A model generated the notes under the pieces. That model was not told where the DNA came from. It searched no databases and saw nothing but the letters and a program-made list of their open reading frames with translations. From Narcine bancroftii (lineage: Eukaryota): DNA of 64,000 nucleotides. The stretch's first letter is position 1; each line of letters starts with the position of its first letter. The position numbers and the translations under genes are program-made. Below, piece after piece: positions 1 through 37,360 of the stretch. The DNA lies in contig NW_027211801.1 in the NCBI RefSeq assembly GCF_036971445.1, positions 434,001-498,000 on the forward strand, given 5' to 3'.

Positions 1-510
1 TTCACCTCCTATGTAAAAATCTATACAACCTTGCCTTCAATATATTTACTGAGGATGCCTGGAATGCTTCAATGGGCAGCGAATTCCACAGATTCCCCAC
101 CCTCTGGGAATAGCAGTTCCTCCTCATCTCCATCCTAATGCTACTCCCCTGGATCTTGAGGCAAAGTCCCCTCGTTCTGGTCTCCCCCACCAATGGGCAC
201 AACTCACCGAGCTCTTTCTTATCCACACCTTTCATGATTTTATACATTTCTATAAGATCCCATCCCATTCTTCTAAATTCCAGCAAGTGCTAACACAGAC
301 AACTCATTCTCTCTTCATAGGCCAACCCCTTCATCTCTGGAATCAACTTGGTGAACGTCCTCTGCACCGATTTAAAGCCAGGACATCCTTCCTCAGGTAA
401 GGAGACCAGAACTGCTACAGTTCTCCAGATGCAGCCTGAACAGGACTTTGTACAGTTATAGCACAATCTGCCTGCTACTAAATTCAATCCCTCCAGCCCT
501 GAAGGCCAAG
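1..510 (-). mobile_element. CR1 LINE 3' fragment
   Basis: ORFs 2..286 and 290..487 translate to the CR1 ORF2 C-terminus (LEFRRM.DLIE.YKIMKG..., QRV.NLWNSLP). Confidence 0.85.
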
Positions 511-559
511 ATTCCTGTCCCTGAACTCCTGCAATGTATCCATGGCTGAAACGCCAGTG

Positions 560-1425
560 CTGATTTCCTTTCCTTAATTATGTCCACGTTGTTAAAAGCC
601 ATCTTATGAAAAGCAAAATAAATAAAAGTGAAGGGTTACTGGAAGGACTCAGCCAGCCAAGTAGCATCTGTGGAGATAAATCCACCAGAATCAGGATTTA
701 TTGGCACAAACATGCCAATCCGTGTCAAAGAAGAACCTGTGAGGGTGGAAAACCAGAATAAAACAGTAAGGGACGTCGCCCAAATCTCAGAATGACCAAA
801 ATCAACTGTTTGGAACATCATTGAGAAGAAAGAGGATCCAGGTGATCTCAGTCAATGCAATGGGACTGGTCGACCAAGGAAAATCTCCACTGTTGATGAC
901 AGAAGAAATCTCAGCAGAATGAAGAAGATTCCCCAAATTCCTGTCGGACCGATCAGAAACACTCTTCAGGAGGCAGGTGTGGATACATCATGGCGACTGT
1001 CCACAGGAGACTAAGGTTTGACGATGTCTCTCACTGCTTTATTCTGGTTTTCCAGCCTCATAATGGATTCTTTCACTTTCATTGGCTCAACTCTGGTCCT
1101 CGTGTAGAAAGATGGCAACCACAGACTCCAAACACTTTGAGCAAGTCTCGCTCACTTATACCTGCACCAATGAAGCAATTAAACACACCTGAGTTCTCAC
1201 AAACAGCGGTGAAGCCAAATGTCCCAAACGTTATGGTTCGCTGAAATGACGGGACTATGGATAAAAAGGGCTGTAATTTCTCCATGGTCAAGCCAAACTG
1301 TGTACAAATAACCTTGATTATAAAGTGGAATGTGGACTTTATTTGTTGCTGTTCTCCTCAGTTTTCAACTTGAAATCAGACAATTCACATGTATTTAAAG
1401 GGAAAAAGCATCTTAGTTCCAAACA
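560..1425. mobile_element. Tc1/mariner-derived non-autonomous remnant with an internal inverted duplication
   Basis: Transposase N-terminus-like sequence (aaccagaataaaacagtaag...ccaaaatcaactgtttggaacatcatt...gatgacagaaga); from ~1010 the reverse complement of its own left part follows; second copy at ~10790-11620. Confidence 0.6.
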
Positions 1426-1429
1426 TCCT

Positions 1430-2130
1430 AAACTGAGGAGTGGGGGAGAACAGAGGGACCTGGGAATACAGATACATCATTGTCTGAACATGGCATCACG
1501 GGGGGATAGGGGTGGAAAGAGAGCTTTTGGAATCTTGACCTTCATAAATGGAAGTATTGAGAACAGGAGTTGGGATATTTTGGTCAAGTTCTATTAGATA
1601 TTGGTGAGGCCAAATCTGGAGCATCGTGTGCAGTTTTCATCACCAAACTACAGGAAAGTTATCACAAAGATTGAAAGAGAGCAGAGAAGATTTACAAAGA
1701 AGTTGCCCCGACTTCAGGAACTGAGGTACAAGTAAAGGTTAAACAGGTGAAGACTTTATTCCCTGGAATGTAGAAGAATGAACGGAGATTTGATAGAGGT
1801 ATTTAAAATTATGAGGGAGATAGAGAGAGTAAATATAGGCAGGATTTTCCCGTGAGGGGAGGTGAGATAGAGACCAGAGGACATGGGTTAAAGGAGAAAG
1901 GGAAAAAGATTTGGGTGAACTTCACACAGAAAGCGGTGGGATTGTGGAATGAGGTGCCAGCTAAAGTGGTGAATGCAGGCTCAATGTTCACATTTTAGAA
2001 GTATTTGGACAGGTACCTAGATGGGAGGAGTATGGACGGCTATGGGTGGGGTGCATGTCAGTGGGACTAGGCAATAACATGGTTCGACACAGACTAGATG
2101 GGCTGAAAGGCCTGTTTTGTCTGTAATGTT
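1430..2130 (+). mobile_element. CR1 LINE 3' fragment
   Basis: EQRDLGIQIH...AFGIL.FIN.SIE.RSW..LV motif and CR1-type 3' UTR. Confidence 0.85.
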
Positions 2131-2527
2131 CTTTGATGAAGGGCACTGTGTCTCTGGCTAATTAGTGGTAATTATGCCTCTCCCGCAGGAGAAAGTTTGT
2201 GTTATGTCATGTATGTGACCTGAGAACAAATCTGATTATTTCAGGGATCACAACCAGATTAGGTGATTCTCCACCCCACGGTGTTCTCCTGACACCTCTC
2301 CCTCATGGGCATCCCTTCTTAAACAGAGCCTCCGGAGCTGCTTTGCACACGCTAGAGCCGGATTGGCTCCGGGAGTTCAAGGAACCCAATCGCGCAGCTT
2401 TGTCTTCGCCTGTCTGGACCGATGATCTCTGCGCCGCGTCTCCTGTGATCTATGATGGTCTGGATTCCAGGTGAGAAGTCAGGGGGCCATTCCCCATTTA
2501 TTATAACCTGCCCCCTCCAGCAAAGGT

Positions 2528-2555
2528 CACATTGAGAACGCACTGTACAAAAACC
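2528..2555 (+). promoter_or_regulatory. V-side recombination signal sequence (12-RSS)
   Basis: Heptamer CACATTG (2528-2534, 6/7 match to CACAGTG), 12-bp spacer agaacgcactgt, perfect nonamer ACAAAAACC (2547-2555); abuts the V 3' end. Confidence 0.93.
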
Positions 2556-2649
2556 CTCTGGGGTGGCCTGAGATTCAGATTTCTTGTCAGAGCCCGCACA
2601 TCCATCACCGGGATTCTTTCTCCTGCCTGCCCGGCCGATTGACCACCCA

Positions 2650-2975
2650 TTACTAGCGACTCCCCATTCTCCCTCTCTTCCCCATCTCCCTCTCCCCTTC
2701 CCTTCAGCTCTCCACCTCCTTTCCCTCTCCATTCACAGACCCATCCCCCCTCCCCTTGTTGGCTGATGTGCCCTCCCTCCCTTATCCACCTCTGACCTCC
2801 TGCCTATTTGGATTCCTGCTCCACCCCCGCCCCCTCACCATTTTGTCCGCGCGCCCCCTCAACCCTTGTTGAAGGGCTCAGGCTATTTCTGCTACCTAAA
2901 GTTTGATGCTTGACCTGCTGAGTTTCCCCACCGTTGTTCCAACTTCAATCATTGCGTCTGCAGACTTTCCTTTTT
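2650..2975 (+). mobile_element. Penelope-like element terminal fragment in the V-J spacer
   Basis: Pyrimidine-rich stretch, then tgaagggctca...ttgacctgctgagtttc...gtctgcagacttt, homologous to 20234-20370. Confidence 0.5.
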
Positions 2976-3287
2976 CATTCCTCACCTATTTAAACTTTCC
3001 CTGTAACTGAGATCCTCAAGACATGGTAACATTCGTGCAAATCCTCCGCCCACCTCCTTCCAATGTTATTGTTGTCTTTCCTGCAGTTTGGTGACCAAAT
3101 GCATGTAATTCTCCAAATTTAGCCTTCCCAATGTCTGAGTGTTAACTCTTTCTCCCGCACACACCTGAATGTTTCCCCTTACTTGTGATATGACTGGTTC
3201 GATTTTTGCTTTCAGGTCTCTTCTGTGATGTGGATTCGCCTGAACAATGCAGGGATTGGTGCTGAAGACGGCCTGTCGGAGCATGGG

Positions 3288-3327
3288 AGTTTTTAGGAGG
3301 TCCTCTCTATTGGAACATTGCACAGGT
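3288..3327 (+). promoter_or_regulatory. Decayed J-side 23-RSS-like signal
   Basis: Nonamer-like AGTTTTTAG (3288-3296, 6/9 match to GGTTTTTGT) about 23-24 nt upstream of CACAGGT at the J start; heptamer assignment is ambiguous (CATTGCA at 3316 is an alternative). Confidence 0.55.
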
Positions 3328-3533
3328 CTACGACCCTGGAACGATATTGGTCATTACCAGTGAGTGAACTCAAGTAAATTTTGGGACATTTATTTCTCGA
3401 TTTGCGAATTAAAAAAAAAATCATTTTGTCCATGAGCACAGAAGATGTCAGTAAACTGTCAAGACACAGCACTGTAGACAGATTCTGCAGATCCCCCTAA
3501 GCCAGATGAGGTTTAAAAAGTCACCTCAACACA

Positions 3534-6123
3534 TGTGGCATTGATTAAAGTTCACACTCGACTGGAGGGAGAACAAATGGTTTTATTAGCTGACAACACA
3601 GGTGGGGTTCACGAATAGGCTTCAGTGGGGTTCTGGGTTTAGGCAGAAAACCAGGGTTTATATACAGGCTCCAGGGGGAGGAGCTGGGAGGCAGGACCAG
3701 TCATCAGTACAGCACACTTCTAGTGAATCCCAGTTCACTACATTCACCCCTTCCTTCAGAATTAAGGGTCTGTGGATGACGAGAACAAGGATCAATAGCC
3801 AGGAAGAGACACAGAAGAGAAATATTTATGATAGTTTTTCCAGATTGAGGAGGTCCAGGGGTCTGGAGATCCTGGTGAAGTGCCTTAGCGCCGAGGTGTA
3901 ATGGGGTCTTTGAGTCTCGTGGTCCGTCTGTGGTGGAAGGTTAGTGGGCTAGGGCTCCAGCTCGACAATGGAGGTGGATTCACTCTCCTCCAAAACCTGG
4001 TCCTGTGAGGCCCCGAGCAGGGGTGGGGAGAAAATGCTCAGTAGTTTGTGGGGCCTCTGAGGCAATGGATCCTCTGTTCCAGCAGGTGTCTGGTCCCTGA
4101 CGGAGATGGTGTCTTCCCTACCATCCAGGCATGGCATGTATGCGTACGTGGGGTTGGCATGGAGCAATTTCACCCTTTCCACCTTGCTTCTCCTCGCTTC
4201 TCCTTACGTGCTTCTTGAAAAGGACCGGAGCAGGACTACTGAGCCGAGCTGGGAGCTTAGTCCCTGATGTTGACCTTCTGTTGAATGTAAACGTGAGCTC
4301 ATGAGCAGTAGGTTTGTTTGCAGAGCAGAGTAGCGACCAAATGGAGTGGTGCGTGATGGGGAGGACATCCTGCCAGCATGAGTCTGGAAGGCCTTCTTGC
4401 TTCAGGGCAAGTTTGACAGCCTTTCAGATCGGGGCATTCTCTTTTTCAACCAGCCCATTCCCCTGGGGGTTGTAACTGGTTGTCCTGTTGGACGTGATGC
4501 ACCCACCAGCAGGAACTGAGGCAGCTCCTCGCTGATGAAGGCTGAGCCCCTGTCACTATCAATATAGCTGGGATACTTGAACAGTTGAAAATAGAATCTA
4601 GGCCCTTCATAACAGACGTAGCAGGTGTGCCTGAGCACGGGATGGCGACTGGGATGTGGGAGTATTCATCGATGAATGAAATCATATATTCCAGTTCGTG
4701 GAGAGGCAAGGTCTTGTAGAATTGATACTGAGCCGTTCAAAAGGCCTGAATGACTTAATCAGGTGTGCTTTTGCTGGGTGATAAAAGTGCGACTTATACT
4801 CAGTGCAGACCTGGCATGACCTGACGTTTTCTATTGCATAGGGAAAGTTGCGGGACTTGATCAAATGAGCCATGCGGGTGACCCCTGGGTGGCAGAGCAT
4901 ATTCTGTAAGGTCCACAGTTGACCAGTGTATGCGGATGCACATCATCCCCTGGACAAGGCATCTGGAGTGTGGATAAGGGCTTCCTGGCCGGTAGATGAT
5001 GCCCAAAATTCTCGGTGGATAGTTCAATCATCCACAAAGAAATTTTGTCATTCTCGATGTCGTTCTTGATTTTTGCGCTATTTCCGTAGGCAGCAGGATG
5101 CGCAGCAGGCAATCTTGGGTGAGCCCGGGGCAGATGGCTTGGTACTGGAAGCCGGACCTCCCTTTGCATGGCACTCCCTCACCCAATGTCCCTTCTTCTC
5201 ACAGCTGGAGCACGCAAGTCTTTGGCTGGGCAGCAGGCAACGGGATGCTGTCCCTTGTTGCAGAAAAAGCACTCCTGGGTTCAGAAGGCAGCTGCCTTTA
5301 GAGGGAGGATCCGGTCCTTGGAGGTGCTCACCCGAGAGTGCCATCTCGTAGGCCACGAGGACATTGTTCTCGAGACTGACCTGTTCCAGAGATTTGGCCA
5401 GCGTGACATGGCTAATGATGTTTTTCCTTCTTGACTCAAGCAGTTGCTGCCTCACATGCTTGGCGTGGACCCCCACGGCCAGAGTGTTCTGGATCTGTTT
5501 ATCTTTCCAGATGTGGCCTGAGGTGGCCACATACCTGCTCTTCTTAGCCAGTGTCCGCATAACCAGGACATTGTCCTCAATCGACTCTCCAGGCCGTTTG
5601 CGTCGTAGGGCAAGCCAGTGCCTCACTAGGTCCACGTTCGGGGCTTTTATGTAGTGGGCATTCAGATGCTCGATGGTGGGCTCGTACATCAGGAAATCTC
5701 GGACGACTACGTACCCGTTCGTCCCTACCCTTGTCATGACCGCTGAACTCCAGAGTTTGTCTGTATGGAAGATGTCCCTGGCCGAGTTCAGGTAGGCCTG
5801 GAAGCAGTCTAGCCAATATGAAAACTCCAGAGCCGCATTCAGGAGACTGGGGGTCTGTTAGCAGCAAACTTGGCTTGAGTAACATCTCCATCCTTGTTTG
5901 TCAGCTAATAAAATTGTGGTGGGGAATAAAAGATCACAATCGACTGGAGGGAGAACATACACTTTTATTAGATTACAACACAGGTAGGGGTCATGAATAG
6001 GCTTCAGTTTGGTTCTGGGTTTAGGTGTGAAACTAGGGTTAGATACAGGTAACAGGGGGAGGAGCAGGGAGGTGGGACCAGTCGTCAGTACGGCACATTA
6101 ATAGTGAATCGCAGTTCACAACA
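3534..6123 (-). mobile_element. Ty3/Gypsy LTR retrotransposon, internally deleted (gag and integrase remnants, no RT)
   Basis: TG..CA LTRs at 3534-3742 and 5915-6123, clearly diverged from each other; PPT next to 3742; gag from 5891 with CCHC knuckle CSSCEKKGHWVREC; integrase zinc finger (CHPGVTRM..CQVC) and core (SDRGSAFIS); no TSD found. Confidence 0.9.
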
Positions 6124-6194
6124 GAGATTAAAGGAATATGGTGAAATAACAGGTTATAAAATTAATTGAGATAAAAGTGAAATGATGCTTTTGG

Positions 6195-7790
6195 TTGAGG
6201 GGCATTATACTCAATGCAAAAAAAAGGTTCAATTTAAATGGTATTAATGTTGAGATAGTCAGATGGGTTCAACAGTGGCTTGAAGATAGACACCAAAGAG
6301 TATTGGTGGATAACTGTCTGTCAGGATGGAGGCTGGTGATGAGTGGTGTGCCTCAGGGCTCGCTGTTGGGTCCCTTGTTGTTTGTCATTTATATTAATGA
6401 TTTGGATGATGGAGTGGAAAATTGGGGTTAATAAAGATGAAGATGATACAAAAATAGGGTTTTTGGGAACTGCAGAAGGATTTGGACTGTTTAGAAGAGT
6501 GGGCTGAAAGATGGCAGATGGAGTTTACTATCGATAAGTGTGAAGTACTTCATTCTGGGAAGAATAATCAAAACAGGAAATATGCAGTGAAGGGGAGGGC
6601 ATTGAGGAATGCAGAGGAACAAAGAGATCTTGGAATAAGGTCTCATTGTTCTTTGAAAATGGATTCTCATGAAAATAGGGTGGTAAAGAAGGTTTTGGGC
6701 ATGCTGGCCTTTATAAATCAAAGCAGAGAATATAGGATCTGGGAGGTGGTATTAAGACTGTTCAAGGCATTGGTGAGGCCAAATTTAGAATAGTGTGTGC
6801 AGTTGTGGGCCCCAAATTATAGGAAGGATATCAATAAGATAGAGAGGGTTCAGAGAAGATTTACTAAAATGTTGCCTGGATTGCAGTATCTAGAATACAA
6901 AGAATGATTGAGTTGACTGGGTCTTTATTCATCCGAGCATAGAAGGCTGAGGGAGGAATGGATAGAGGTTTTTAAAATTATGAGGGGGACAGACAGAGTA
7001 GATGTGCATAGGCTCTTCCCCTTGAGGTTCGGTGAGATTGGAACGAGGGGTTATAATTTAAGGGTTGGGGGCAAAAGTTTAGAAGTAATATGAGAGGGAG
7101 CTTCTTCACTCAGAGAGTGGGGGCTGAGTGGTTGCAGCAGGGCCAATGTTGTCATTTAAGAGACGGTTGAACGTCGAAGTACTCGAGATGGCAGAGGTCG
7201 ACAGCATCGAGTCCACGCTGCTGAAGATCCAGCTGCGCTGGATGGGTCACGTCTCCAAGATCGTGTTATATGGCGAGCTCTCCACTGGCCACCGTGACAG
7301 AGGTGCACCAAAGAAAAGGTACAAGGACTGCCTAAAGAAATCTCTTGATGCCTGCCACATTGACCACCGCCAGTGGGCTGATAACGCCTCAAACCGTGCA
7401 TCTTGGCGCCTCACAGTTTGGCGGGCAGCAACCTCCTTTGAAGAAGACCGCAGAGCCCTCCTCACTGACAAAAGGCAAAGGAGGAAAAACCCAACACCCA
7501 ACCCCAACCAACCAATTTTCCCCTGCAACCGCTGCAACCGTGTCTGCCTGTCCCGCATCGGACTTGTCAGCCACAAACGAGCCTGCAGCTGACGTGGACT
7601 TTTTACCCCCTCCATAAATCTTCGTCCGCAAAGCCAAGCCAAAGAAAGAGAATGAGTACTTGGATGTGAGGGGATTGGAGGGTTCTGGACAGGGAGTGAG
7701 TGGGTGGGAGAAGAGGAGATCACTTAAATCGGTGTGGACGAGAGGGGCTGATATCGCCTGTTTCCGTACTGTAATTGGAGTATATGGTGA
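6195..7790 (+). mobile_element. CR1 LINE, 5'-truncated, interrupted by an RTE
   Basis: [24 protein letters not shown] motif and downstream CR1 ORF2. Confidence 0.9.
7170..7650 (+). mobile_element. RTE-clade LINE 3' fragment
   Basis: QLRWMGHV...LYGELSTG.R.RGAPKKRYKD...[21 protein letters not shown]; purine-rich GAA-type tail. Confidence 0.9.
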
Positions 7791-9640
7791 TATGGTAGAG
7801 GGATTAAATATTTGGGAATTAAAATGTATAAAATTTGGATAATTTATATTAGTTGAATTATTTACCATTATTTAATAAAATTAAAGATGATTTGAATAGA
7901 TGGAATTATTTACCTATAACTTTAATAGGAAGAGTGAATTATTTCAAGATGAATATTTTCCAAATGATTCAATATCTTTGTCAATACATCAAAAAATTTT
8001 AAGGATCTGTTTAATTATGAGGAAATTTTTGTAGAAAGGTAAAATGGTTAGAATTTCCTTAGAGAAATTAACTTGGAAATTTCAATCACAGTGTCCTGTA
8101 GTGAGCCAGGTCAAACACACACATGACTGGCCAAATCACTGCAGCAAACAACCAATACGGGAGAGCACGGATACTTTATTCCCACCGCACTGAAGTTCCA
8201 GGCTGCAGGAGCACGTTGCCAGGGGAATGACCAGGCCTTACAGCTGCATTATGACATCACCCCCATGAGCATGTCACCCTTCCCACCCCCACTAAAAAGG
8301 AATGCGCGTGGTTTGAATAAATGGCAGATACTGGTTTACGTGCTTGGTGTGGACAGCATTTAATTCAGCAGCTCTGCCTTTAGCAGTGCGACATTTTACA
8401 GCTTCCACATTTCCAAATTATTATAACACCGCTCAGTTCAGATTTATTAATGGAATTTTAATTGAAGTAAGGACCCACTAATACTGAAATTTTTAATTAA
8501 ATTATGGAATAAAATAGATTATGAGATAGGTGGGAAAGGTTAGATTTCATGTAAAACAACTTTATACCAACATAATTTTTTTCTTTTGACTGTTAATAAT
8601 CAATTTATAAAGATAGGAATCAAATAGGGATTCAAATGATAGAAAATTGATTTGAAGTTGGTTATTATGTTTCTTTTCAAATAAAAATAATACCTTTTTG
8701 TTATTATCACATTAAAACTTTATAAATTGATAAATTAGGTCAAAGTTTAAGATTACCTTGCCAGTCTGAGGTAGAAATTTTACTTACTAAAGAGAGTATT
8801 AAGACATTTGTTTCAGAAATGTATAAATTACTTCAAAGCAAATTGTCCAAATCAGATATTCATAAATCAAGATTAAAGTGGGAAACTGATTTAGGTAAAA
8901 CAATAGATCAAGATGATTGGAGTATGTTATGTGAAGATAATATGACTAAAATTATCAATGCAAGATGCAGATTAGAACAATATAACTTTTTACATTAATT
9001 ATATTTAACACCTGAAAAATTAAAAAGATTTAATTGAATTTCGTATGAGTTATGTTTTAGACATCATAGGTTCTTTTGTTCACTCAACTTGGCCGTGTAT
9101 TAAAGCATGTTGAGAGAAAGTGTTAAAGGTTAAACTTCCGTTAGACCCAAAGTTATTTCTATTAGGATATATTAAAATGTTTAGTTTAAAATTAAGGTAA
9201 ATCATTTATCAAATTGAATTTTTACAACTGGCGATTACTTGGAAGTCTGATATGGATATGTGGATGCAGAAATAACATACTGAAATGAGATCTTGTTTTC
9301 CTCTTCAAAGGTTAACTTAGAATTTAAATGGTAAATAATTTTTTTAACAATATGGAACCCATATTTACAACAAGTGTTTTTGAAAATTTCAGCTCTCAAC
9401 AGCTCGTCCTCCTGGTGGGACTCGGTTTCACGGGGGTTAATTTGAACTTATATATTCATTCATAATCTTTGACATCTTTCTTTCTGAAGGGTATTGGAAG
9501 GGAGGTGGGTTGTGGGGAGGGAGTAGGGTTTAGTATATATACCACATGTATTGTCTTATATATATGTAAATATATATATATATAATTCATTATTGACTTA
9601 ATGTTGTGGTTTTAAAATTTTTAATCAAATAGTCAAAGAA
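7790..9640 (+). mobile_element. Old L1-clade LINE 3' part (also 6124-6194)
   Basis: AT-rich decayed ORF2 similar to the L1 at 39602-45462 (IKYLGI, LPITLIGRVN..KMNIF); G-rich 3' UTR near 9500. Confidence 0.75.
8097..8393 (+). mobile_element. Probable solo LTR inserted in L1
   Basis: TGTAG...GCGACA ends, AATAAA near 8316, GC-richer than the L1 it interrupts; TSD not clear. Confidence 0.5.
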
Positions 9641-10249
9641 AAACCAACAGCAATGGCTCCAGCCTTGATCCCTCAGACACACCACTAGTCACAGACCTCC
9701 AGTCTGAGAAGCAATAATCTGCTACCACTTTAATGGTCTTTCGGCCCATTACAACCACGCATTCACTGCTCCTGTCCTGTCCCTAACACCGACTTCCTGC
9801 TGTTTTTGCTTCCCTCTCGGCCTTTGCTCCCGGACTGAAGTTCAGTACTTGAATGGCCTCAGAACTGTAATGTTTATCTTTAATATCTTCACCCAGAGCC
9901 TCGCAGAAAATGGTGGAGCTTTAATGATTCCAGAATTATAAACACACATCTCCACATCAGCACTCACTCCCTTTCTGTCTCCTCCCCCGTCCTCTCAACA
10001 ACTGCTAGAGCCCAGTGACCACAACACCTGTCTGCATGATTAAAAACAGTGTAGATTTGTGTAGCAGCAGCTAAATAAAGGCTCGGACAACACCGCCAGC
10101 GTCCCAGAGGGAGCTCATGAGAACCACAGAAGGCAGCTGTCTTTTCAAACCTGGAAACCATTGCCTGACGAGGCCTGAGGGTGAGGGAGGAGGGAACAAG
10201 TCCCAGATACATCAAACCTTTTGACTGAACTGATGATGGGCTCATCTCC

Positions 10250-12560
10250 ACGAACCTGCCTTGTCCTCATATCCCTTAATTCCCCTACTATGTCAAATTG
10301 TACACAACATTGCCTTCAATAAATTTACTGAGGTCACGTCGAATGGTTCAATGGGCAGTGAATTCCACAGATTCCCCACCCTCTGGGAAAGGGAGTACCT
10401 CCACATCAATGTCCCAACTCTACTCCCCTGAATCTTGAGTTATGTGCCGATGTTCTGATCACCCCCACCAATGGAAACAATTTACCTACCTCTATCTTAT
10501 CTATGCCTTTCATAATTTTAGACATTTCTATTAGATCCACTGTCATTCACCTAAATTCCAGTGAGTGCATTTCCAGATGACTTCAAAGGCCAACCTACTG
10601 AATCTCCTCTTCACTGTCTCCAGAACCAATTAATCCTTACTCAAGTTAGGAGATGAGAACTGGGGCAATTCTCCAGATGCACCCTCACTAGAACAACACA
10701 ACGTGACTGCTCCAAAATTCAATCCCTCCAACACTGCAGGCCAATATTCGAGTCCCTGAACTCCTGAACAGTTTACATGGCTGGAAATGAGAGTGTTGAT
10801 ACCTTTTTGTTAATTATGTCCACATTGTTAAAAGCCACCTGATGAATTTCAAAATAAAAAAATGGATAAATAGAGGGTTGCTGGCAGCAAAGTAGCACCT
10901 GTCGAGAGAAATCAGCCAGAATCATGATATATTGTCGCAAACATGTGCCAATGAGAGTCAAAGAAGTACCTGTGAGGGTGAAAAACCAGAATAAAACAGT
11001 AAGGGACATCGCCCAAACCTTAGGATGACGAATATCATTAAGAAGAAAGAGGGTCCTGGTGATCTCAGTCAATGCAATGGGACTGGATGACCAAGGAAAA
11101 CCTCCACTCTTGATGACAGAAGAATTCTCAGCAGAATGAAGCAAAGTCCACAAACTCCTGTTGGACAGATCAGAAACATTCTTCAGGAGGCAAGTCTGGA
11201 TACGTCAATGACGACTGTCCACAGGGGACTAAGGTTTGACGATGTCTTTCACTGTTTTATTCTGGTTTTCCGGCTTCTTTAACTTTCATTGGCTTAACTT
11301 TGGTCCTCATGTAGAAAGATGGCAACCACAGACTCCAAATGCTGAGAGCAAGCCTCACTCATTTATACCTGCACCATTGAAGCAATTAAACACATCTGAG
11401 TTCTAACACACAGCTGTGAAGCCAAATGTCCCAAATGTTATGGTTCCCTGAAATGACGAAACTAAAGGCTGTAATTTCTCCCTGGTCAAACCAAAATGTG
11501 TAAAAATAACCTTGAATTAAATTTGGAATCTTCACTTTAATTGCATGGGAATTATCGGATTATGTTGAAAACTGTGGAAAACAGGGGCAAATAATGGAAA
11601 AAGCATCTTAATACCAAACATCCTCATCTGAGGAGTGCAGTAGAACAGAGGGTCCTGGGAATACAGATACATCATCCCTTGAAAGTGGCATCACATCGGG
11701 ATAGGGGCGTAAAGCGAGCTTTCGGCACTTTGACCTTCATGAATCAAAATATTGAGTACAGGAGTTGGGATGTTTTGGTCAAGTTTTGTTAGACATTGGT
11801 GAGGCCAAACCTGGAGAATTGTGTGCAGTTTTGGTGACCGAACTAATGGAAAGATATCAATAAGTTAGAAACAGTGCAGAGAAGATGAACTCGGACATTG
11901 CCCAGACTTCAGGAACTGAGTTACAACTAAAGGTTAAACAGGCTAGGATTTATTACCTTGTCTGTAGAAGAATGAGGGGAGATTTGATCGCGGTATTTAA
12001 AATTATGAGGTGGATTTTGCAGAATAAATGTAGGGAGGATATTTCCACTGAGGGTAGGACCGCAGAGCCCACCTCACTGACAAAAGGCAAAGGAGGAAAA
12101 ACCCAACACCCAACCCCAACCAACCAATTTTCCCTTGCAACCGCTGCAATTGTGTCTGCCTGTCCCGCATCGGACTTGTCAGCCACAAACGAGCCTGCAG
12201 CTGACGTGGACTTTTTACCCCCTCCATAAATCTTCGTCCGCGAAGCCAAGGCAAAGAAAAAGAAGAAGAGGTGAGATAGAGACCAGAAGACATGGGTTAA
12301 GGGAGAAAGTGGAAAGGTTCTGTGGGAAATTCTTCACATAGAGAGTGGTGGGAGTGTGGAACAAGTTGAAGTGGTGAATGTGGGAAGGGACACGGATGGG
12401 AAGGGTTCAACGTTCACATTTAAGAAGAATTTGGATAGATACTTGGATGTGAGGGGTATGGAGGACTGTGGGCTGAGTGAAGGTCAGTGGGACCATACCA
12501 ATAAAATGGTTTAGATAGACTGGAAGGGCCGAAGGGCCTGTTTCCGTGCTGTCATGTTCT
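10250..12560. repeat. CR1(-), Tc1 remnant and CR1(+) block; duplicate of 1-2130
   Basis: Colinear with 1-2130; carries an extra RTE insertion that the first copy lacks. Confidence 0.85.
12058..12270 (+). mobile_element. RTE 3' fragment, inserted after the duplication
   Basis: Near-identical to 7447-7650; absent at the paralogous position near 1858. Confidence 0.9.
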
Positions 12561-12840
12561 CTGATGGAGGGCACTGTCTGTGTCTGTGTCATTAGTGCTA
12601 ATTCTGCCCCTCCCGCGGGAAAAAGTCTGTCTTGTGTCATGTATGTGACCCGAGAACATTTCAGGGACCACAACCAGATGGGGTGATTCTCCGCCCCACG
12701 CGTCCTCCTGACTCCTCCCCCTCATGGACACCCCTTCTTAAACAGAGCCTCCGGAGCCGCTTTGCAGACGGGAGAATCGGAGCGACTCCGGGAGTTCGAG
12801 GAACCCAATCGCGCTGCTTTGTCTTCACCTGTCCGGAGCG
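12560..12840 (+). promoter_or_regulatory. IgL V promoter region
   Basis: Conserved in all three copies; octamer variant CTTTGCAG 12760-12767 (consensus ATTTGCAT), CCAAT near 12806, CpG-rich. Confidence 0.55.
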
Positions 12841-12889
12841 ATGGTCTCTGCGCTGGGTCTCCTGTGGTCTCTGATGGTCTGGGTTCCAG
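12841..12889 (+). CDS. IgL leader exon
   Basis: [16 protein letters not shown](G); donor CAG|GTGATG; 101-nt intron ending ttgcag at 12990. Confidence 0.92.
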
Positions 12890-15800
12890 GTGATGCTATC
12901 CCCTCCCCTCTAACTGAGCCGGGTTGGACCTTTTCCCCGCGCCTTGTTTTCCCGCGTTCACCCGCTGCGGTGTTTTTTGTGTCATTGCAGGTGTCCTGGC
13001 GTTGGTTAAACTCCATCAGACCCCAATGTCCGACCCACTCTCTGCGGGACAGACCGTCCACTTGGAGTGTCGGCTGGAGGGGGGGAGCGTTGCAAGTTAC
13101 AACATGCTCTGGTACCGACAGCGACCCGGAGAAGCTCCAGAGTGGGTATTGGTACAATATACATCTAATAGTATCTACCGAGGCAGCGGGTTCACCAGCC
13201 GATTCGCCCCGTCCAGAGACACCTCGGCCAACACTCACACCTTGACCATCCGCAGCCTGGAAGCTGGAGACTCCGCCGTCTACTACTGTGCTCCATGGGA
13301 CAGTTCAGCAAAGGTGCTCGTGTTCGGCCCTGGATCCACGTTGATCGTAACAAGTGAGTGAACTCGAGGAACTTTTCGGACTTTTATTTCCAGATCTGAG
13401 AATCTATTTTTCATTCATTTTGTCCGTGAGCACAGAAGATGTCAGTAAACTGTCGAGACCCCGCGCTGGAGACAGATTCTGCAGATCCCCCTCAGCCAGA
13501 TGAGGTTTGACCTGGGAAAGTCACCTCATCCCGACCCCCAGATTGGTGTGTGTGGGCCCCCAACGCAATTTGATACCCAGTTAATCTCAATTCCAAGGTC
13601 AACATTTTAACATCACTTCACAAAAATCATGTTGGGTCCAATTTATTCTTAAGAACTTTCCCTACAAACTTTTGAAGTTGTGTCCAATAATGTTTCACCA
13701 TCATCACATAACCAAGTAGAATGTAGGAAAGAAGCTACTTCCTTATGACACCTGAAACATAAATCTGAAGAAATTAAATTATATCTCTTTAATTTTTCAG
13801 GGGTTAAATATCACTGATGTATAAAGTTATAATGAAGCAACATCTCACATTAACAATCTTAGTCACACTATCTTTACATAAATTACCGCAAAATTCCTGA
13901 TCAACTATGATCCCTTAATCTTTTTCCCTCTTTAATCTAGACTTATATAAATCTAATTTAGGCATTTTATTCTGTAATAACAAATACATTTCAGAAACAA
14001 ATGTTTCCTTCCCAACTTCCTTAAGCCAAATTTCAACTTTTACTTGCCTTGGCAACATTAAAGAATGTCCAAAATTATCCAATAGTAAAGCTTTAATTTG
14101 GTAATAACAAAAAAAAGTAGTTTGTGGAATTTCCTTCATTCTTTGAAAAAACATTAAATAACCAGCTTCATAACAATCTTGTACAATCTTAATTCCTTTC
14201 TGATCTCGGATTTTGATTATTAAGCGTAAAAGGAAAAGGTTTATTCTGGTATAAAATTATCTTTTCTGAAATTTTCCCCTGTTTACCTATTTCCTCATGT
14301 ATCATTTTCTACCATTCAATTAAATGTTTCAAAACAGGTGAATTATATGTCAATACTAACTTGGAATTCCATTTATCAATAAATTGCTTCTTTTTCTTCT
14401 CAGCAATTGTGGATAACACAGTGTTAACCCAAACCAATGGATAATCCAAGTCCAACATTCTATGAATACATTTCAATTGTGCTGCTCTTTAATAATTGTG
14501 AAAATTTGCAAGTTGTAAATCTCCCAGTTCATACCTTCACGTTAATGTTTGTAAAGATACTCTCAACATTTTATCTTTCCATAAAAATAAACTTTCTAGC
14601 TATAGAATTCAAATCCCTAAGAAACTTTTGAGGAATTTACAATGTATAGATTAAAAAAAGATATTGTATTCTAGGAAAAATATCCATCTTCATAAAAAAT
14701 AACTCTATCTATTGATGCGAGAGGTAAATCTTTCATCTATTGAAATCACTCTTGATTTTATGAAATAAAGGCAACTAATTTAACTCATAAAAATGATCCA
14801 ATTTCCTATCCAATCTAATACCTAAATATTTAATTTGATCTGACCATTTAAATTGAAGAATCATTTTACAATGAGGATAATCACCATCAATCAATGGCAG
14901 AATCTTACTTCTTCCCTCATCAATTTTATAGCCAGATATTTCTCCATATTGTTTCAATCTTTCACATAGTGATTTCAAAGTATTCTGAGTTTCTGTTAAG
15001 TAAACCAAAACATCATCTGCAAATAAATTAGTCTTATACTCCTCAGATTTCATTTTAACACCTTTAATATTATTTTCTTCTCTTATGAATTGAGCCGAGC
15101 TTTCAATACCTAATGCAAACAACGCGAGAATCAAAGGGCAACTTTGTCCACTCGATCTTTCTAATAAAATCATGATGATATTTGACCATTCGTCCCCAAT
15201 CTGGCAGAAGCTTTTTTATAGAAAGATTCAATCCAATGATTGAATGATTGGTCCAAACCCAAACCTTTTTAATACCTTCAATAAAAAAACTCCACTCTCA
15301 CCGATCAAATGCCTTTTTGGCATCTAATGATAAAACCACTGGTCAGTTGGATTCCTCCCAAGAAACAGGAATCATACTAATTGATATTGCAATAGTATCT
15401 GAAGAATAATGATTTTTTAATAACACCAGCTTGATCTAAATGTATTAAGCCTGGGAAGTATTTCCTCAATCAATTTGCTAGAACCTTAGTTACAATTTTG
15501 TAATCAACATTTCACAAAGAAATTGGTCCATAAGATCCAGTATTTAAGATTTATTAATGCTATTGTTAATAGATGTATTGAAACAAGGACTGGAAGTTCA
15601 CTCTTTACCAGATTCATTTTCTCAAGCTATTATCTCTCTCTCTCTTCTCTTTGGCTTGGCTTCGCGGATGAAGATTTATGGAGGGGGTAAAAAGTCCACG
15701 TCAGCTGCAGGCTCGTTTGTGGCTGACAAGTCCGATGCGGGACAGGCAGACTATTATAACAGTTAACCATATAACCATTTATTCAAGAAAAGTTTGGGAT

Positions 15801-18800: not shown

Positions 18801-20172
18801 TGCCTCTCATCTTGACCCTTGGCTCTCTATTTTGAGGCCCCCACCCACACCCAATATAGGAAGGAGTCTAGTTCTCTCCCTTATACAACACGACAGCACA
18901 GAATAGGCCCTTGACCCTCATTGTTGTGCTGACTTACCATTAAAAAACACTCAATTTTGCTTTCATCCATGTGCCTGTGTAACAGTGTCTTAAGTGCCCC
19001 TAATGTTCCAGACCCCACCCCCACCCCTGGAAATGCATTCCAGGAACCCACAACTCTCAGTGTTAAAAAAACTTGCCTGCGATGTCTCCCCTGAACCATC
19101 CTCCCTTCACTTTGTACAGATGTTCCCTGGTGTTTGCTATTCCTGCCCTGGGAAAAAGGCACTGGCTATCCTCCTTATCTATCCCTCTCAGAACATTAGA
19201 CCACAGAACATTAAAAGGTATCAAAAGGCTTTTCGGCCCTTCTCGTCTGTGCCGAGTTATTACCCTGCCTAGATCCATTGATTTTATCTCAGTCCATAGC
19301 CCTCTGTACCCCTCCCATCCATGTGCCTGTCCAAATTCTTCAATGTTAAAATTGAGCCCGCATTCACCACTTCAGCTGGTAGCTCGTTCCACATGCTCAC
19401 TACTCAATTTGTAAAGGAGTTTCCCCTCATATTCCCCAAAACATCGCCTTTCATCCTTAACCCATGTCCTCTGGTTTGTATGTTACTTATCGTCAGTTGA
19501 AAAAGCATTTTCTCTGTCTGTGCCTCTCATAACGTTAAATATGTCTACCAAATCTCCCTCATTCTCCTTTCCCCAGGGAATAAAGTTCTAGCCTGTTTAA
19601 CCTTTCTCTGTAACTCTGTTCCTGAGGTCCTGTTAACATCCGAGTAAATGTTCTCTACACTCTTTCAATCCTAGTTCGTGACCAATGTTTTACTCTAATT
19701 TACCATAAAACATCCCAACTCCTGTACTCAATACTTTGATTTATAAAGGCCATTGTGTTCATGTCCATGGAATCTTTTATTCAGAGTTGGTGTTGGTGTT
19801 TGGACTTCATCACCTCATGATGTTTCCCTTCTGCTCTCCCACACAGGTAGCGACTCTCGGAAACCCTCGGTTCAACTGCTCCCTCCCTCCCAGAATGAGA
19901 TCGACTCAGGCTCGGCCACCCTGTCTTGCCTGGTGAGCGGGTTTAAGCCAGGCTTCGCGTCACTCCAGTGGAGCGTGGATGGGGTCGAGACAGAGAGCGG
20001 GGTGACGACGGGTGTCGCATCCCCTGATGCTGACCAGGCCTACAAGCAGAGCAGTTACCTGCATGTGTCCGCCACTGCCTGGAACACAGGCTCCAGCTAT
20101 ACCTGCATCGTGAGCCACAGCTCACTGAGCTCGCCTCTGCGCGAGTCCATCTCGTCGTTATCCTGTGTGTAG
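12841..20172 (+). CDS. Immunoglobulin light chain, sigma-cart (type I/NS5-like) isotype, germline-joined VJ; join(12841..12889,12991..13353,19847..20172), 245 aa
   Basis: Three exons with GT-AG phase-1 introns give one 738-nt open frame: signal peptide, V-set domain, C1 domain. Isotype call rests on recalled resemblance to shark type I chains (LxQTPxSDPxSAG, [10 protein letters not shown], RKPSVxLLPPSxxEIDSG). Confidence 0.93.
12991..13353 (+). CDS. IgL pre-joined VJ exon
   Basis: Conserved Cys (LEC), Trp (WYRQ), DSAVYYC, CDR3 [16 protein letters not shown] motif in one frame with no RSS; donor A|GTGAGT at 13354. Confidence 0.96.
13560..15556 (-). mobile_element. Old L1 fragment in the J-C intron
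   Basis: ORF 14775..15173 ([22 protein letters not shown]). Confidence 0.8.
15557..18240 (+). mobile_element. Old L1 fragment in the J-C intron, 5'-truncated, with poly(A) tail
   Basis: [22 protein letters not shown] motif; AATAAA and A-tail near 18217-18238. Confidence 0.85.
15634..15750 (-). mobile_element. Short RTE 3' insertion with 7-bp TSD
   Basis: RTE 3' end; CTATTAT repeated at 15627-15633 and 15751-15757. Confidence 0.88.
18240..19760. mobile_element. Cluster of CR1 3' fragments, mostly on the - strand
   Basis: CR1 ORF2 C-terminal and 3' UTR motifs (ORFs 18881..19162 and 19063..19278). Confidence 0.7.
19847..20172 (+). CDS. IgL constant exon
   Basis: Polypyrimidine tract plus acacag acceptor; [43 protein letters not shown]; penultimate Cys fits the H-L disulfide. 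Confidence 0.96.
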
Positions 20173-20233
20173 TGAGGCCACACCGGTCAGCAGAACACGC
20201 AGATTCTTGGCTCGTGCCTTGGATTTCACAGCT

Positions 20234-20370
20234 CAATGAAGGGCTCAAGCCTGAAATGTTGATTATGTATTTTTACCTTTGCTATATAAAGGACACTGTT
20301 TGACTTGCTGAGTTACTCCAGTGTTGTGTATTTACTTCAACCACGGGTGTCTGCAGACTTTCATGTTTTG
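20234..20370 (+). mobile_element. Penelope-like terminal fragment in the IgL 3' UTR
   Basis: aatgaagggctcaagcctgaaatgtt...gctgagttactccag...gtctgcagacttt; same family as 2650-2975. Confidence 0.55.
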
Positions 20371-20595
20371 TTCCTGATTCTCTGCCCATGTTTAATGCCC
20401 TGTCTGGGGTCTGTGTCTGCCTTGTGTGGTATAATCGTGCAAAAATGTTCACTGCTGGAGACCAACCCAATTCTTAATCATCTCCAAAATCAGATTTTCC
20501 TGTATTCTGTAGAATTGTCCTTCCAGCCCCACATTTCAACTCCTGTTGTGTGTAGAATGTGGGGTAGTGATCAGATCCTGTGCAAAGCAGAACTC

Positions 20596-20601
20596 AATAA
20601 A
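20596..20601 (+). terminator. Probable IgL polyadenylation signal
   Basis: First AATAAA after the C-exon stop, followed by GT-rich sequence. Confidence 0.7.
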
Positions 20602-20995: not shown

Positions 20996-20999
20996 CTGT

Positions 21000-24910: not shown

Positions 24911-24959
24911 TTTGTCAGGGTTAATGACAGGGCGGGGGGGGGGGGGGGGGGGTTGGTAG

Positions 24960-35599: not shown

Positions 35600-37360
35600 T
35601 AACAAAGATTGTTATTGTGAGATATAGGTTGTTCCATTATTACTTCATACATCATCAATATATAACCCCTGAAAAATTCAAGAGATATAATTTAATTTCT
35701 TCAGATTTAGATTTCAGGTGCCAGAAGGAAGTAGGTTCATTCCTACATTCTACTTTGTTATGTGATTATGGTGAAACAATTTTGCACATGACTTAAAAAG
35801 TTTTTAGAGAAAGTTCTGAAGAATAAATTGCTGATGGAATCGACATTATTTTTATTAAATAATATTAAAATGTTTACCTTGAAATTGAGAATAACCAGGT
35901 ATCAAATTGTACTTGGGTCCCACACACATCATTCTGGGGGTCAGGATGAGGTGACTTTCCTAGGGTCAAACCTCATCTGGCTGAGGGGCATCTGCAGAAT
36001 CTGTCTCCAGCGCGGGGTCTCGACAGTTTACTGACATCTTCTGTGCTCACGGACAAAATGAATGAAAAATAGATTCTGAAGTTTGGAAATAAAATTCCTT
36101 AAATTTCCTTGAGTTCACTAATTTGTTCTGATCAACGTGGTTCCAGGACCGAACACCCAAACCTTTGCTGAACTGTCCCATGTAGCACAGTAGGACATGG
36201 TTGAATCTCCAGCTTCCAGGCTGAGGATGGTCAAGGAGTGAGTGTTGGCCAAGGTGTCTCTGGATGGGTCGTATCACCTGGTGAACCGGTGGCCTTGGGA
36301 GTATTTATTATTCTGTGTTGTGGCCACCTGAAAGTGGCTACTATTAGACATATAGTGTATCAATACCCACTCTTGAGCTTCTCCGGGTCGCTGTCGGAAC
36401 CAGTTCATGTGGGAACTTCCAACGCTCCCACCCTCCAGCCGACAGTCCAAGTGACCTCTCTGTCCCGCGGAGAGTGGGTCAAACATTGGGGTCTGATCGA
36501 GTTTAACCAATGCCAGGACACCTTCAATGACACAAATAAACATGATACCGTGTTTTCACGGGGAAACAAAGTGCGATGAAAAGCTTAGTTGGAGGGGAGG
36601 TGGGGGGTTATAATACATGGGGAATGGCCTCTTGACTTCTCAACTGGAACCCAGACCATCAGAGATCAAAGGAGACTCGGCACAGAGACAATCGTTCTGG
36701 ACAGGCAAAGACAGAGCAGTGCAATTGGGTTCCACGAACACACGGAGTCGCTTTAGTTCCCCATCTGCAAAGCAACTCTGGAGGCTCTGTTTAAGAAGGG
36801 GTGCCCATGAGGGGGAGGTGTCAGGAGAACGCCAAGCGGCGGAGAATCACCCCATCTGGTTGTGTTCCCTGAAATAAGCAGGTTTGTTCTCAGGTCACAT
36901 ACATGACACAACACAGACATTTTCCTGCGGCCCTTCTAGTCTGTGTTGAACCATTATTTCTGCCTGGTCCCACCGACCTGCACTCCACCCATAACCCTCA
37001 ATACCCCTCCCTTCCACGTACCTGTCCAAGTTCTTCTTAAATGTGATCATGGAGCCCCATTCACCATTTCACCTCGTTCCACACACCAACCATTCCCTGT
37101 GTGAATAATTTTCCCCAAAATCTTTTTCCATTCACTCTTAACGCATGTCCTCTGGATTCTATTTCACCTCCCTTCAGTGGAAATATCCTACCTACATTTA
37201 ATCTGTCTATTCCCCTCATCATTTTAAATACCTCGATCAAATCTCCCCTCATTTTCTGCTGTCCAGGGAATAAAGGCCAAACTTGTTTAACCTTTACCTG
37301 TATCTCAGTTCCTGATGTCTGGGCAATGTCCGAGTAAATCTTCTCTGTACTCTTTCTATC
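35600..37360 (-). repeat. Inverted segmental duplication of ~11860-13870
   Basis: Reverse complement matches the CR1 end, promoter, leader, VJ, J-intron and adjacent L1 remnant of copy B. Confidence 0.9.
36123..36692 (-). pseudogene. Ig light chain (sigma-cart) germline-joined VJ pseudogene, copy C
   Basis: Leader 36692-36644 with ATG>ATT, TGA at 36668-36666 and donor GT>TT; VJ exon 36521-36123 with a 36-nt insert, internal TGA, ..YCATWDSSAKVWVFGPGTTL..; J donor GT>AT; no C exon found. Confidence 0.93.

What the first reader, a model, noticed from the sequence alone, without database searches (positions are those of the whole stretch)
2422..3359. Fossil of an unjoined sigma-cart V-J gene, RSSs still visible, about 10 kb from its germline-joined paralog
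Seen: after the leader and about 47 nt of intron, the sequence jumps to CAGCAAAGGT, identical to the V part of CDR3 in both joined copies. It is followed at once by CACATTG-12bp-ACAAAAACC. About 730 bp further, part of it TE insertions, lie a nonamer-like AGTTTTTAG and a J remnant with an intact donor. The ORF track misses this completely. Established: sigma-cart genes use V-12/23-J signals, nurse shark has both split and joined NS5 genes, and skate type I genes were described as joined. Inference: this is a relic of the ancestral rearranging substrate. It fixes the exact germline V end (..GCA AAG GT) and shows the joined genes arose by precise loss of the RSS-bounded spacer.
Basis: partly seen in the sequence, partly recalled or inferred. 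Interest (0 to 1): 0.8.

Follow-up and report, generated by a model that had tools for sequence, protein, structure and literature searches.

The report
Dead unjoined light-chain gene relic
A broken copy of a ray antibody light-chain gene still has the cut-and-join signals between its V and J parts, while its neighbours have V and J already fused; this is direct but confirmatory evidence that the fused genes came from split ones.

Summary
Copy A (2134-3530) is a paralogue of two germline-joined L-VJ genes, B (12841-13353, intact, C exon 19847-20171) and C (36692-36123, minus strand, dead). After the leader and 47 nt of intron, A jumps to CAGCAAAGGT. This 10-mer occurs only three times in the window, each time as a V end. 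It abuts CACATTG-12-ACAAAAACC, the only site in 64 kb within one mismatch of the RSS12 consensus (0 of 100 shuffles). Short-read contigs bridge the junction, and their depth shows the signal lies in low-copy DNA, not in a repeat.

The J side is weaker. It has a 6/9 nonamer-like run and a heptamer cut down to CAC. One RNA-run contig variant restores CACAGTG 23-24 nt from the nonamer.

A is a diverged sister of B and C, not their parent. The sigma-cart label fits (IMGT CDR1/CDR2 of 8/7, signals in 12/23 order), but lambda is not excluded because no reference sequences could be reached.

RNA contigs splice the leader to an acceptor at 3216, so the relic or a close copy is transcribed. The product does not look coding.

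This scan already reported similar relics on other DNA of this genome (+132, +640 and +839 kb). Verdict: a new member of a known kind, of moderate interest.

The parts
2134..2421 (+). Copy A 5' flank and promoter region, homologous to copies B and C
   Evidence: blastn: 2134-2474 against 12562-12893, 83% identity, E = 2e-101; three-way alignment
2422..2470 (+). Copy A leader exon (ATG 2422; in-frame TGA at 2446-2448; donor GT at 2471)
   Evidence: Sequence; aligned to the leaders of B and C
2471..2517 (+). 47-nt stub of the leader intron; the deletion breakpoint lies at 2517/2518
   Evidence: About 85% identical to the start of copy C's intron. Homology then ends, and CA microhomology sits at the junction
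2518..2527 (+). Last 10 nt of the V coding segment (CAGCAAAGGT)
   Evidence: This 10-mer occurs only at 2518, 13306 and 36170(-), which are the V ends of the three copies. No other part of the V exon is left in 2471-3326
2528..2555 (+). V-side recombination signal: CACATTG, 12-nt spacer, ACAAAAACC
   Evidence: 15 of 16 consensus positions match. It is the only such site in the window, with 0 of 100 shuffles and an expectation of 0.002. Read depth shows low-copy DNA
2556..3287 (+). V-J intervening DNA. About 245 nt are low-copy (2556-2631, 2815-2875, 3181-3287). Repeat insertions occupy 2632-2814 and 2876-3180
   Evidence: Read-depth profile of DNA runs X1 and X4; window copies of 2907-3136; C/T-rich microsatellite at 2661-2731
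3216..3359 (+). Stretch used as a second exon in RNA contigs. The acceptor is tttcag at 3210-3215. The exon contains the decayed J signal and the J remnant
   Evidence: X5 contig joint 2472->3220 with CTC between, depth 1469. X5 depth is high over 3181-3424 and about 0 over 2510-2631
3288..3326 (+). Decayed J-side signal: nonamer-like AGTTTTTAG (or GTTTTTAGG, 3289-3297), a 23-24 nt spacer, and a heptamer cut down to CAC (3321-3323)
   Evidence: Sequence. X5 contigs with AGTGAT inserted after 3323 read CACAGTG. Not found by the consensus scan at 3 mismatches or fewer
3324..3359 (+). J remnant (..VYDPGTILVIT, against [11 protein letters not shown] in copy B), followed by the donor GTGAGT at 3360-3365
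   Evidence: Gap-free, in-frame alignment with B's J, 21 of 32 nt identical
3360..3528 (+). Start of the J-C intron, homologous to B and C; no C exon follows
   Evidence: blastn: 3331-3528 against 13325-13528, 80% identity, E = 1e-48. The only C exon in the window is at 19847-20171
12841..13353 (+). Copy B: intact germline-joined gene (leader 12841-12886, VJ exon 12991-13353)
   Evidence: Open 120-codon V-J reading frame; Pfam V-set, E = 6.6e-15
19847..20171 (+). Constant-region exon of copy B
   Evidence: Pfam C1-set, E = 4.9e-21; acceptor and reading phase fit the J donor
36123..36692 (-). Copy C: joined VJ pseudogene (leader 36692-36644, VJ exon 36521-36123)
   Evidence: ATT replaces ATG, TGA in the leader, both donors mutated, a 36-nt insertion and a stop in CDR2/FR3

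Best explanation
Copy A is a dead, unjoined member of the same light-chain cluster family as the joined genes B and C.

Its ancestor had the usual split layout: leader, intron, V, RSS12, a few hundred bp of spacer, RSS23, J. An ordinary deletion of about 410 bp, with CA microhomology at its ends, then removed most of the leader intron and all of V except the last 10 nt. Two repeat elements later landed in the V-J spacer. In this allele a 6-nt loss also clipped the J heptamer.

B and C descend from split relatives in which a RAG-type reaction in germ cells removed exactly the RSS-bounded piece. Their V ends run to the base that abuts the heptamer in A. A is a diverged sister of those ancestors, not the parent.

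The family is most likely sigma-2 (sigma-cart, type I).

The promoter, the leader donor and a cryptic acceptor at 3215/3216 are still used. The relic, or a near-identical copy, therefore yields a spliced RNA that does not look coding.

Shown: the anatomy, the non-chance status of the RSS12, the low-copy context, and the sister relationship. Inferred: the order of the lesions, the RAG mechanism, and the isotype.
For: - Three paralogous units with collinear flanks.
- The V-end 10-mer is unique to the three V ends.
- The RSS12 matches 15 of 16 positions, and 0 of 100 shuffles give such a site.
- Identity to copy C's intron is about 85% up to 2517 and then collapses.
- No other V remnant is present.
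- DNA unitigs bridge the junction, and depth over 2510-2631 is low (36-49, against thousands in the repeats).
- J and its downstream intron are 80% identical to B.
- An RNA-run variant restores CACAGTG 23-24 nt from the T-rich nonamer.
- The non-repeat spacer of about 245 nt is near the 300-400 bp spacing reported for elasmobranch clusters (Anderson 1995 abstract).
- Branch lengths make A the outlier.
- IMGT CDR1 = 8 and CDR2 = 7 on copy B. These are the invariant sigma-2 values in Table S5 of PMC5985310.
Against: - The J-side signal in the assembly is weak by itself.
- The variant with the intact heptamer was seen only in a run guessed to be RNA, from another sample, and laid at 85% identity or more. 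It could be an allele or a paralogue.
- A and C share a leader TGA that B lacks. This does not fit a simple (A,(B,C)) tree unless there was parallel change or gene conversion.
- Isotype: the best human per-domain match is Vlambda6 (70 bits, against 61 for VH3 and 47 for Vkappa). An earlier agent of this scan typed a neighbouring array member as lambda.
- No comparison with split horn-shark or nurse-shark genes was possible.
Confidence: 0.85

Rival explanations
1. It is the same relic, but the family is lambda (type II/NS3) and not sigma-cart. It would then be a trace of a split ancestor for an isotype so far reported only as joined in cartilaginous fish, and it would carry kappa-type 12/23 signals.
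For: - The best per-domain human match is Vlambda6; the CDR3 and J read as lambda-like ([14 protein letters not shown]).
- Lambda CDR ranges (3-9 and 3-7) include 8/7.
- An earlier agent typed a neighbouring array member as lambda (unchecked).
Against: - 8/7 is the fixed sigma-2 pattern.
- All lambda and lambda-2 loci described in PMC5985310 have 23/12 signals, whereas here the order is 12/23.
- FR2 (WYRQ..PEWV) and the feature-based atlas search point to VH-like rather than lambda-like V domains.
- A large multi-copy array fits skate type I, with at least 89 clusters.
- Humans lack sigma-2, so a lambda best hit among human sequences is expected in any case.
Confidence: 0.2
2. The RSS-like motif is a chance feature of the leader intron or of a transposable element. 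There never was a split gene here.
For: - Copy C's intron reads CAACTAAGCT where A has CAGCAAAGGT (7 of 10 identical), so the 10-mer alone could be diverged intron.
- Much of the following 730 bp is repeat DNA.
Against: - A 10/10 match to the V end, directly abutting a 15/16 RSS12, has an expectation of about 0.002 per window for the RSS alone.
- Identity to the intron drops from about 85% to roughly half (my estimate by eye) at exactly 2518.
- 2510-2631 is low-copy DNA.
- A J with its own intron follows in the right orientation.
Confidence: 0.02
3. This is not a fossil but a working V-less gene: either a lambda5-like protein (leader, mini-exon with J, then C) or a regulatory germline transcript kept by selection.
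For: - RNA contigs splice the leader to 3216, and the exon is abundant in run X5.
- A 92% identical paralogue contig keeps the same V-less junction (X1 record 3).
- The frame runs from the leader phase into the J phase (144 nt).
- Another reader proposed the same architecture 640 kb away.
Against: - The leader has a TGA at codon 9 and the mini-exon has a TGA at 3263.
- The spliced X5 contig carries one extra C, which gives a stop after four codons (table 7).
- No C exon follows copy A.
- RNA depth runs on past the J donor to about 3480.
- The proposed 'FR2 remnant' is not significant here: score 23, reached by 484 of 2000 shuffles.
Confidence: 0.05
4. A is a joined gene that was split again by insertion of an RSS-flanked element (a RAG-type transposition), rather than an original split gene.
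For: AGGT occurs on both sides of the RSS-bounded piece in this allele (..AAAGGT|CACATTG and CAC|AGGTC).
Against: In the variant with the intact heptamer the right flank is CACAGTG|ATAGG. No 3-5 bp target duplication then abuts both heptamers, which is the test used by Lee et al. 2000. Split genes are the ancestral state of this family in sharks.
Confidence: 0.02

Closest known systems
Nurse shark NS5 (sigma-2/type I) locus set: two split genes, one germline-joined gene and one pseudogene (review PMC5192425)
   Same: One isotype has split and joined members side by side in one genome. The layout is a cluster (L-V-J-C). By my own recollection, not checked here, the signals are V-12/23-J.
   Different: Here the split member is dead: its V body is deleted and it has no C exon. 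It sits inside a large tandem array of a batoid. I found no intact split member.
Nurse shark NS4 (kappa) split/joined gene pairs, Lee et al. 2000 (PMC2193156)
   Same: The logic is the same. Joined genes lack any RSS residue, and their coding ends match those of split relatives, which points to RAG-type joining in germ cells.
   Different: The isotype and lineage differ. In NS4 the split partners are functional and nearly identical to the joined ones, so P nucleotides could be read. Here the partner differs from the joined copies at 13-22% of aligned sites and the J flank is not reconstructible.
Skate (Raja erinacea) type I clusters, Anderson et al. 1995 (PMC2192082)
   Same: Batoid multi-copy joined VJ-C clusters, probably the same isotype.
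   Different: That study found no unjoined type I gene among at least 89 clusters. This window shows an unjoined relic in another batoid order (electric ray, according to earlier notes of this scan).
Relics already reported by this scan in the same genome (s1-876407, s1-878717, s1-878935)
   Same: They are RSS-bearing or V-less dead copies about 10 kb from joined sisters in the same chromosomal region.
   Different: They are separate loci, 132-839 kb away. I could not compare the sequences. One was typed lambda by its agent.

Membership tests
Split (unjoined) Ig light-chain V-J cluster gene | V coding end directly followed by heptamer, 12-nt spacer, nonamer | tested here: met
   CAGCAAAGGT | CACATTG-12-ACAAAAACC at 2518-2555; 15 of 16 positions; 0 of 100 shuffles
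Split (unjoined) Ig light-chain V-J cluster gene | J preceded by nonamer, 23-nt spacer, heptamer | tested here: inconclusive
   The window has a 6/9 nonamer-like run and only CAC of the heptamer. X5 contigs with +AGTGAT give CACAGTG at 23-24 nt
Split (unjoined) Ig light-chain V-J cluster gene | Both signals in deletional orientation, a few hundred bp apart, within one cluster | tested here: met
   732 bp apart, or about 245 bp without the repeat insertions. 300-400 bp is typical
Split (unjoined) Ig light-chain V-J cluster gene | Complete V exon, open frame, own C exon (a functional gene) | tested here: not met
   The V body is absent, the leader has a TGA, and there is no C exon between A and B. 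It is a pseudogene
Sigma-2 / sigma-cart / type I light chain | IMGT CDR1 = 8 and CDR2 = 7 residues | tested here: met
   Copy B: GGSVASYN and QYTSNSI, counted on the translation. Reference values from Table S5 of PMC5985310. The same values also lie within the lambda range
Sigma-2 / sigma-cart / type I light chain | Kappa-type signal order (V-12 / 23-J) | tested here: met
   RSS12 on the V side. The reference state for horn shark type I is my own recollection and was not checked in a paper here
Sigma-2 / sigma-cart / type I light chain | V and C cluster with reference sigma-2 sequences in a tree | not testable with these tools
   The protein word search returned no hit for copy B's V-J domain. 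The reference papers are not held
Lambda / type II / NS3 light chain | V-23 / 12-J signal order (as in all lambda and lambda-2 loci described) | tested here: not met
   The V side carries a 12-nt spacer; lambda loci have 23/12. The state in cartilaginous-fish lambda is unknown, because all known genes there are joined
Lambda / type II / NS3 light chain | Closest similarity to lambda V domains | tested here: inconclusive
   Vlambda6 is the best human domain (70 bits), but VH3 scores 61 bits and nanobody/VH clusters top the atlas search. No sigma-2 reference was in the comparison
Germline-joined gene made by RAG-type joining (Lee et al. 2000) | The joint contains no RSS residue, and the coding ends match those of a split relative | tested here: met
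   B and C keep the V end up to the base that abuts A's heptamer. 4 nt and then the J follow
Germline-joined gene made by RAG-type joining (Lee et al. 2000) | P nucleotides or trimming that show a hairpin intermediate | tested here: inconclusive
   No palindromic bases at either end. The 4 junction bases differ in all copies (GCTC, TTGG, ATAG), so their origin cannot be assigned
V-less surrogate light chain (lambda5-like) | Open reading frame from the leader through a unique region and J into C | tested here: not met
   Stops at 2446 and 3263. The spliced RNA contig has a frameshift to a stop. No C exon follows

The most novel reading that the evidence does not exclude
The family could be the cartilaginous-fish lambda (type II) isotype rather than sigma-2. 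In that case this relic, together with its sisters elsewhere in the array, would be the first evidence that elasmobranch lambda genes were once split. It would also show that they used kappa-type V-12/23-J signals, the opposite of every lambda locus described in bony vertebrates.

A second reading is also not excluded. Alleles that keep the intact J heptamer may leave this transcribed relic as a live RAG substrate in lymphocytes.
Probability: 0.2. Interest if true: 0.7.

Novelty: new member of a known kind. Interest (0 to 1): 0.45.

Why it matters
Skate type I light-chain genes were reported as joined without exception. The long-standing question was whether such fused genes are primordial or secondarily fused. 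The secondary origin was shown for nurse shark NS4. Here a batoid array keeps an RSS-bearing sister copy, so the same origin can be read directly for this family. It also gives the germline V end and the 12/23 order of the signals. The value is confirmatory: it adds a lineage and probably an isotype to an accepted model. It also offers a natural RSS pair and several relics in one genome for dating repeated germline joining.

Tried and rejected
- Protein word search with copy B's V-J domain gave no hit, so there were no reference light chains for a tree.
- PDB searches are dominated by multi-domain chains. Only per-domain scores for V were usable.
- The atlas search gave VH/nanobody and mixed IGL clusters, which is not discriminating.
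- These papers are not held: Criscitiello & Flajnik 2007, Flajnik 2024, Shamblott & Litman 1989 (two papers) and Hohman 1993.
- A peptide-motif search of the paper library found nothing.
- The supplement of PMC5985310 holds no skate or shark sequences.
- I tested the 'FR2 remnant' idea for the mini-exon. It is not significant at the DNA level or the protein level, so I rejected it for this copy.
- Rfam found nothing in 1-14000.
- A search of this scan's findings by sequence was blank.
- I did not type in reference sequences, so no alignment with horn-shark or nurse-shark genes was made.
- No RSS information-content model was available. I used only consensus matches and shuffles.

Full report
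**What is in the window**

Self-comparison finds three paralogous light-chain units.

- Copy B (+) is an apparently working germline-joined gene.
  - The leader is at 12841-12886.
  - A single V-J exon lies at 12991-13353. It has 120 open codons and matches Pfam V-set at E = 6.6e-15.
  - A C1-set exon lies 6.5 kb downstream at 19847-20171. Its acceptor and reading phase fit the J donor.
- Copy C (-) is joined but dead. ATT replaces ATG, the leader carries a TGA, both donors are mutated, and there is a 36-nt insertion and a stop.
- Copy A (+, 2134-3530) is the finding.
- Only one C exon exists in the 64 kb.
- The rest of the window is largely repeats, including several reverse-transcriptase ORFs.

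**Check of the observation**

- The leader starts with ATG at 2422 and runs to 2470.
- A 47-nt intron stub follows (2471-2517). It is about 85% identical to the start of copy C's leader intron.
- At 2518 the sequence switches to CAGCAAAGGT. This 10-mer occurs only three times in the window, always as the last bases of V (2518, 13306, 36170 minus).
- It abuts CACATTG, 12 nt, ACAAAAACC (2528-2555). This is the only site in the window within one mismatch of the RSS12 consensus.
  - None of 100 dinucleotide shuffles produced one.
  - The analytic expectation is 0.002 per window.
- No other piece of the V exon is left between 2471 and 3326.

Copy C's intron reads CAACTAAGCT where A has the 10-mer. 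The deletion probably used this short similarity. Beyond 2518, identity to the intron collapses, by eye to roughly half. The 10-mer and the signal are therefore not diverged intron.

**Artefact and transposon controls**

- Short-read unitigs of two DNA runs bridge the leader, the stub, the V end, the RSS and the spacer: X1 record 4 (2380-2584, no difference) and X4 record 13 (2369-2727, one difference). These runs may be from the assembled sample. They test the assembly, not the individual.
- Depth over 2510-2631 is 36-49, which means low-copy DNA. Depth is in the thousands over 2632-2814 and 2876-3180. The signal is therefore not part of a repeat, while about 490 bp of the V-J interval are later repeat insertions. 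Part of this repeat DNA also recurs in the window.
- About 245 bp of low-copy spacer remain. That is near the 300-400 bp spacing reported for elasmobranch clusters.
- A second DNA contig (X1 record 3, 2361-2584, 17 differences and one gap) shows that at least one 92% identical paralogue has the same V-less junction.

**The J side**

- The J remnant (VYDPGTILVIT, against [11 protein letters not shown] in B) aligns in frame without gaps.
- It is followed by an intact GTGAGT and by 170 bp of intron that is 80% identical to B.
- The signal in front of it is poor. The nonamer-like run AGTTTTTAG or GTTTTTAGG matches 6/9, a 23-24 nt spacer follows, and only CAC of the heptamer is left. A consensus scan allowing three mismatches does not find it.
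- In run X5, which is guessed to be RNA and comes from another sample of the same species, about a quarter of the depth carries AGTGAT inserted after 3323. The sequence then reads CACAGTG followed by ATAGGTC....
- So an allele or a close paralogue keeps a canonical heptamer at the right distance, and this assembly has a 6-nt loss. I treat the J-side signal as plausible but not independently significant.

**Relationship of the copies**

Three-way site counts and distances make A the longest branch.

| Region | B-C | A-B | A-C |
|---|---|---|---|
| J plus intron | 9.7% | 19.9% | 22.3% |
| Upstream plus leader | 12.9% | 12.9% | 17.0% |

A is therefore a diverged sister of the joined genes, not their parent. 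An earlier agent reached the same conclusion for another relic of this genome.

On the V side, the homology of A with B and C ends exactly at the heptamer border, and the joints contain no RSS residue. Lee et al. 2000 read this pattern as RAG-type joining in germ cells.

On the J side, the four bases before GTGTTCGG differ in every copy (GCTC, TTGG, ATAG) and no P nucleotides are evident. 'Precise' excision is therefore shown only for V. No target-site duplication abuts both heptamers, so re-splitting by insertion is not supported.

**Isotype**

- On copy B, IMGT CDR1 is 8 residues (GGSVASYN) and CDR2 is 7 (QYTSNSI).
- Guselnikov et al. 2018 report 8/7 as invariant for sigma-2. The other reported values are:
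  - kappa: CDR2 of 3;
  - sigma: CDR2 of 9-10;
  - lambda-2: CDR2 of 2-3;
  - lambda: CDR1 of 3-9 and CDR2 of 3-7.
  Kappa, sigma and lambda-2 are therefore excluded, sigma-2 fits exactly, and lambda remains possible.
- The signal order here is 12/23, whereas all lambda and lambda-2 loci described there are 23/12.
- The best human per-domain hit is Vlambda6 (70 bits), but VH3 scores 61 bits. The atlas search is topped by VH-like clusters.
- No reference sigma-2 or shark lambda sequence could be reached.
- My estimate is about 0.75 for sigma-2 and 0.2 for lambda.
- Reviews state that lambda genes are joined in all cartilaginous fish studied. [quoted passage not shown]
- The statement that type I genes use V-12/23-J is my own recollection.

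**Transcription**

In X5, depth is very high over the leader region and over 3181-3424. It is about zero over 2510-2631 and falls off by about 3480. A contig joins 2470/2472 to 3216/3220 at GT...AG. The relic or a near-identical copy is therefore transcribed and spliced from the leader donor to an acceptor 72 nt before the nonamer.

The product does not look coding. There are stops at 2446 and 3263, and the spliced contig carries an extra C that gives a stop after four codons.

Another reader proposed an 'FR2 remnant' in a similar mini-exon. In this copy it is not significant.

Contig depths cannot rank expression, and the run type is a guess.

No typed reference sequences were used. No information-content RSS model was available.

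**Verdict**

This is a real relic of an unjoined gene. It is a sister rather than an ancestor of the joined genes, probably belongs to sigma-2, and is one of several such relics this scan has already seen in this genome. It is confirmatory for an accepted model.

Noticed in passing
window 2470/2471 to 3215/3216 (and 3181-3485): RNA-run contigs (X5) splice the leader donor to a cryptic acceptor (tttcag) 72 nt upstream of the J nonamer. They cover 3181 to about 3480 and skip 2510-2631. The dead relic, or a near-identical copy, is therefore transcribed. Coverage runs past the J donor, which fits the absence of a C exon.
   Followed up: partly
window 3323/3324: A 6-nt AGTGAT indel was seen in about 27% of X5 depth and in none of the DNA contigs of sample S1. 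With it the J heptamer reads CACAGTG. It is either a polymorphism or a paralogue.
   Followed up: partly
window 2361-2584: A DNA contig that is 92% identical (17 differences, one gap) spans the same leader, stub, V-end and RSS12 junction. The V-less architecture therefore exists in at least one more genomic copy and predates a duplication.
   Followed up: no
window 2446-2448 and copy C leader (about 36668-36666): Copies A and C share a TGG-to-TGA stop in the leader, as well as an intron-start block that B lacks. Yet B and C are closer overall. This suggests gene conversion or parallel change within the array.
   Followed up: partly
window 13316-13319 and 36160-36157 (minus): The four bases between the V end and GTGTTCGG differ at all positions between the two joined copies (GCTC against TTGG), while their flanks differ by only about 10%. 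This is compatible with two separate germline joining events.
   Followed up: no
window 2244/2245: Three X5 contigs carry foreign sequence ending in ..CAGCATCCATG up to an acceptor-like tttcag at 2239-2244. A minority of transcripts may start in an upstream exon and splice into the region 5' of the leader.
   Followed up: no
window 3530-10280 and 20172-35590: Copies A and C have no C exon of their own. The only C exon in the window (19847-20171) belongs to B, with a 6.5-kb J-C intron full of repeats.
   Followed up: partly
window 3247; 3411-3413; 3420: DNA contigs of sample S1 read G at 3247 where the assembly has A. One allele has TTT plus one extra T in place of part of the A-run at 3411-3421, so the site is heterozygous.
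   Followed up: no
window 41746-43441, 50912-52600, 58778-61363; also 7128-7589 and 38532-39173: There are several LINE-type reverse-transcriptase ORFs (Pfam RVT_1, E = 1e-9 to 1e-26) and repeated ORFs (7128-7589, 38532-39173) whose Cys/His-rich tails look like LINE ORF2 ends. The light-chain array is heavily invaded by retroelements.
   Followed up: partly
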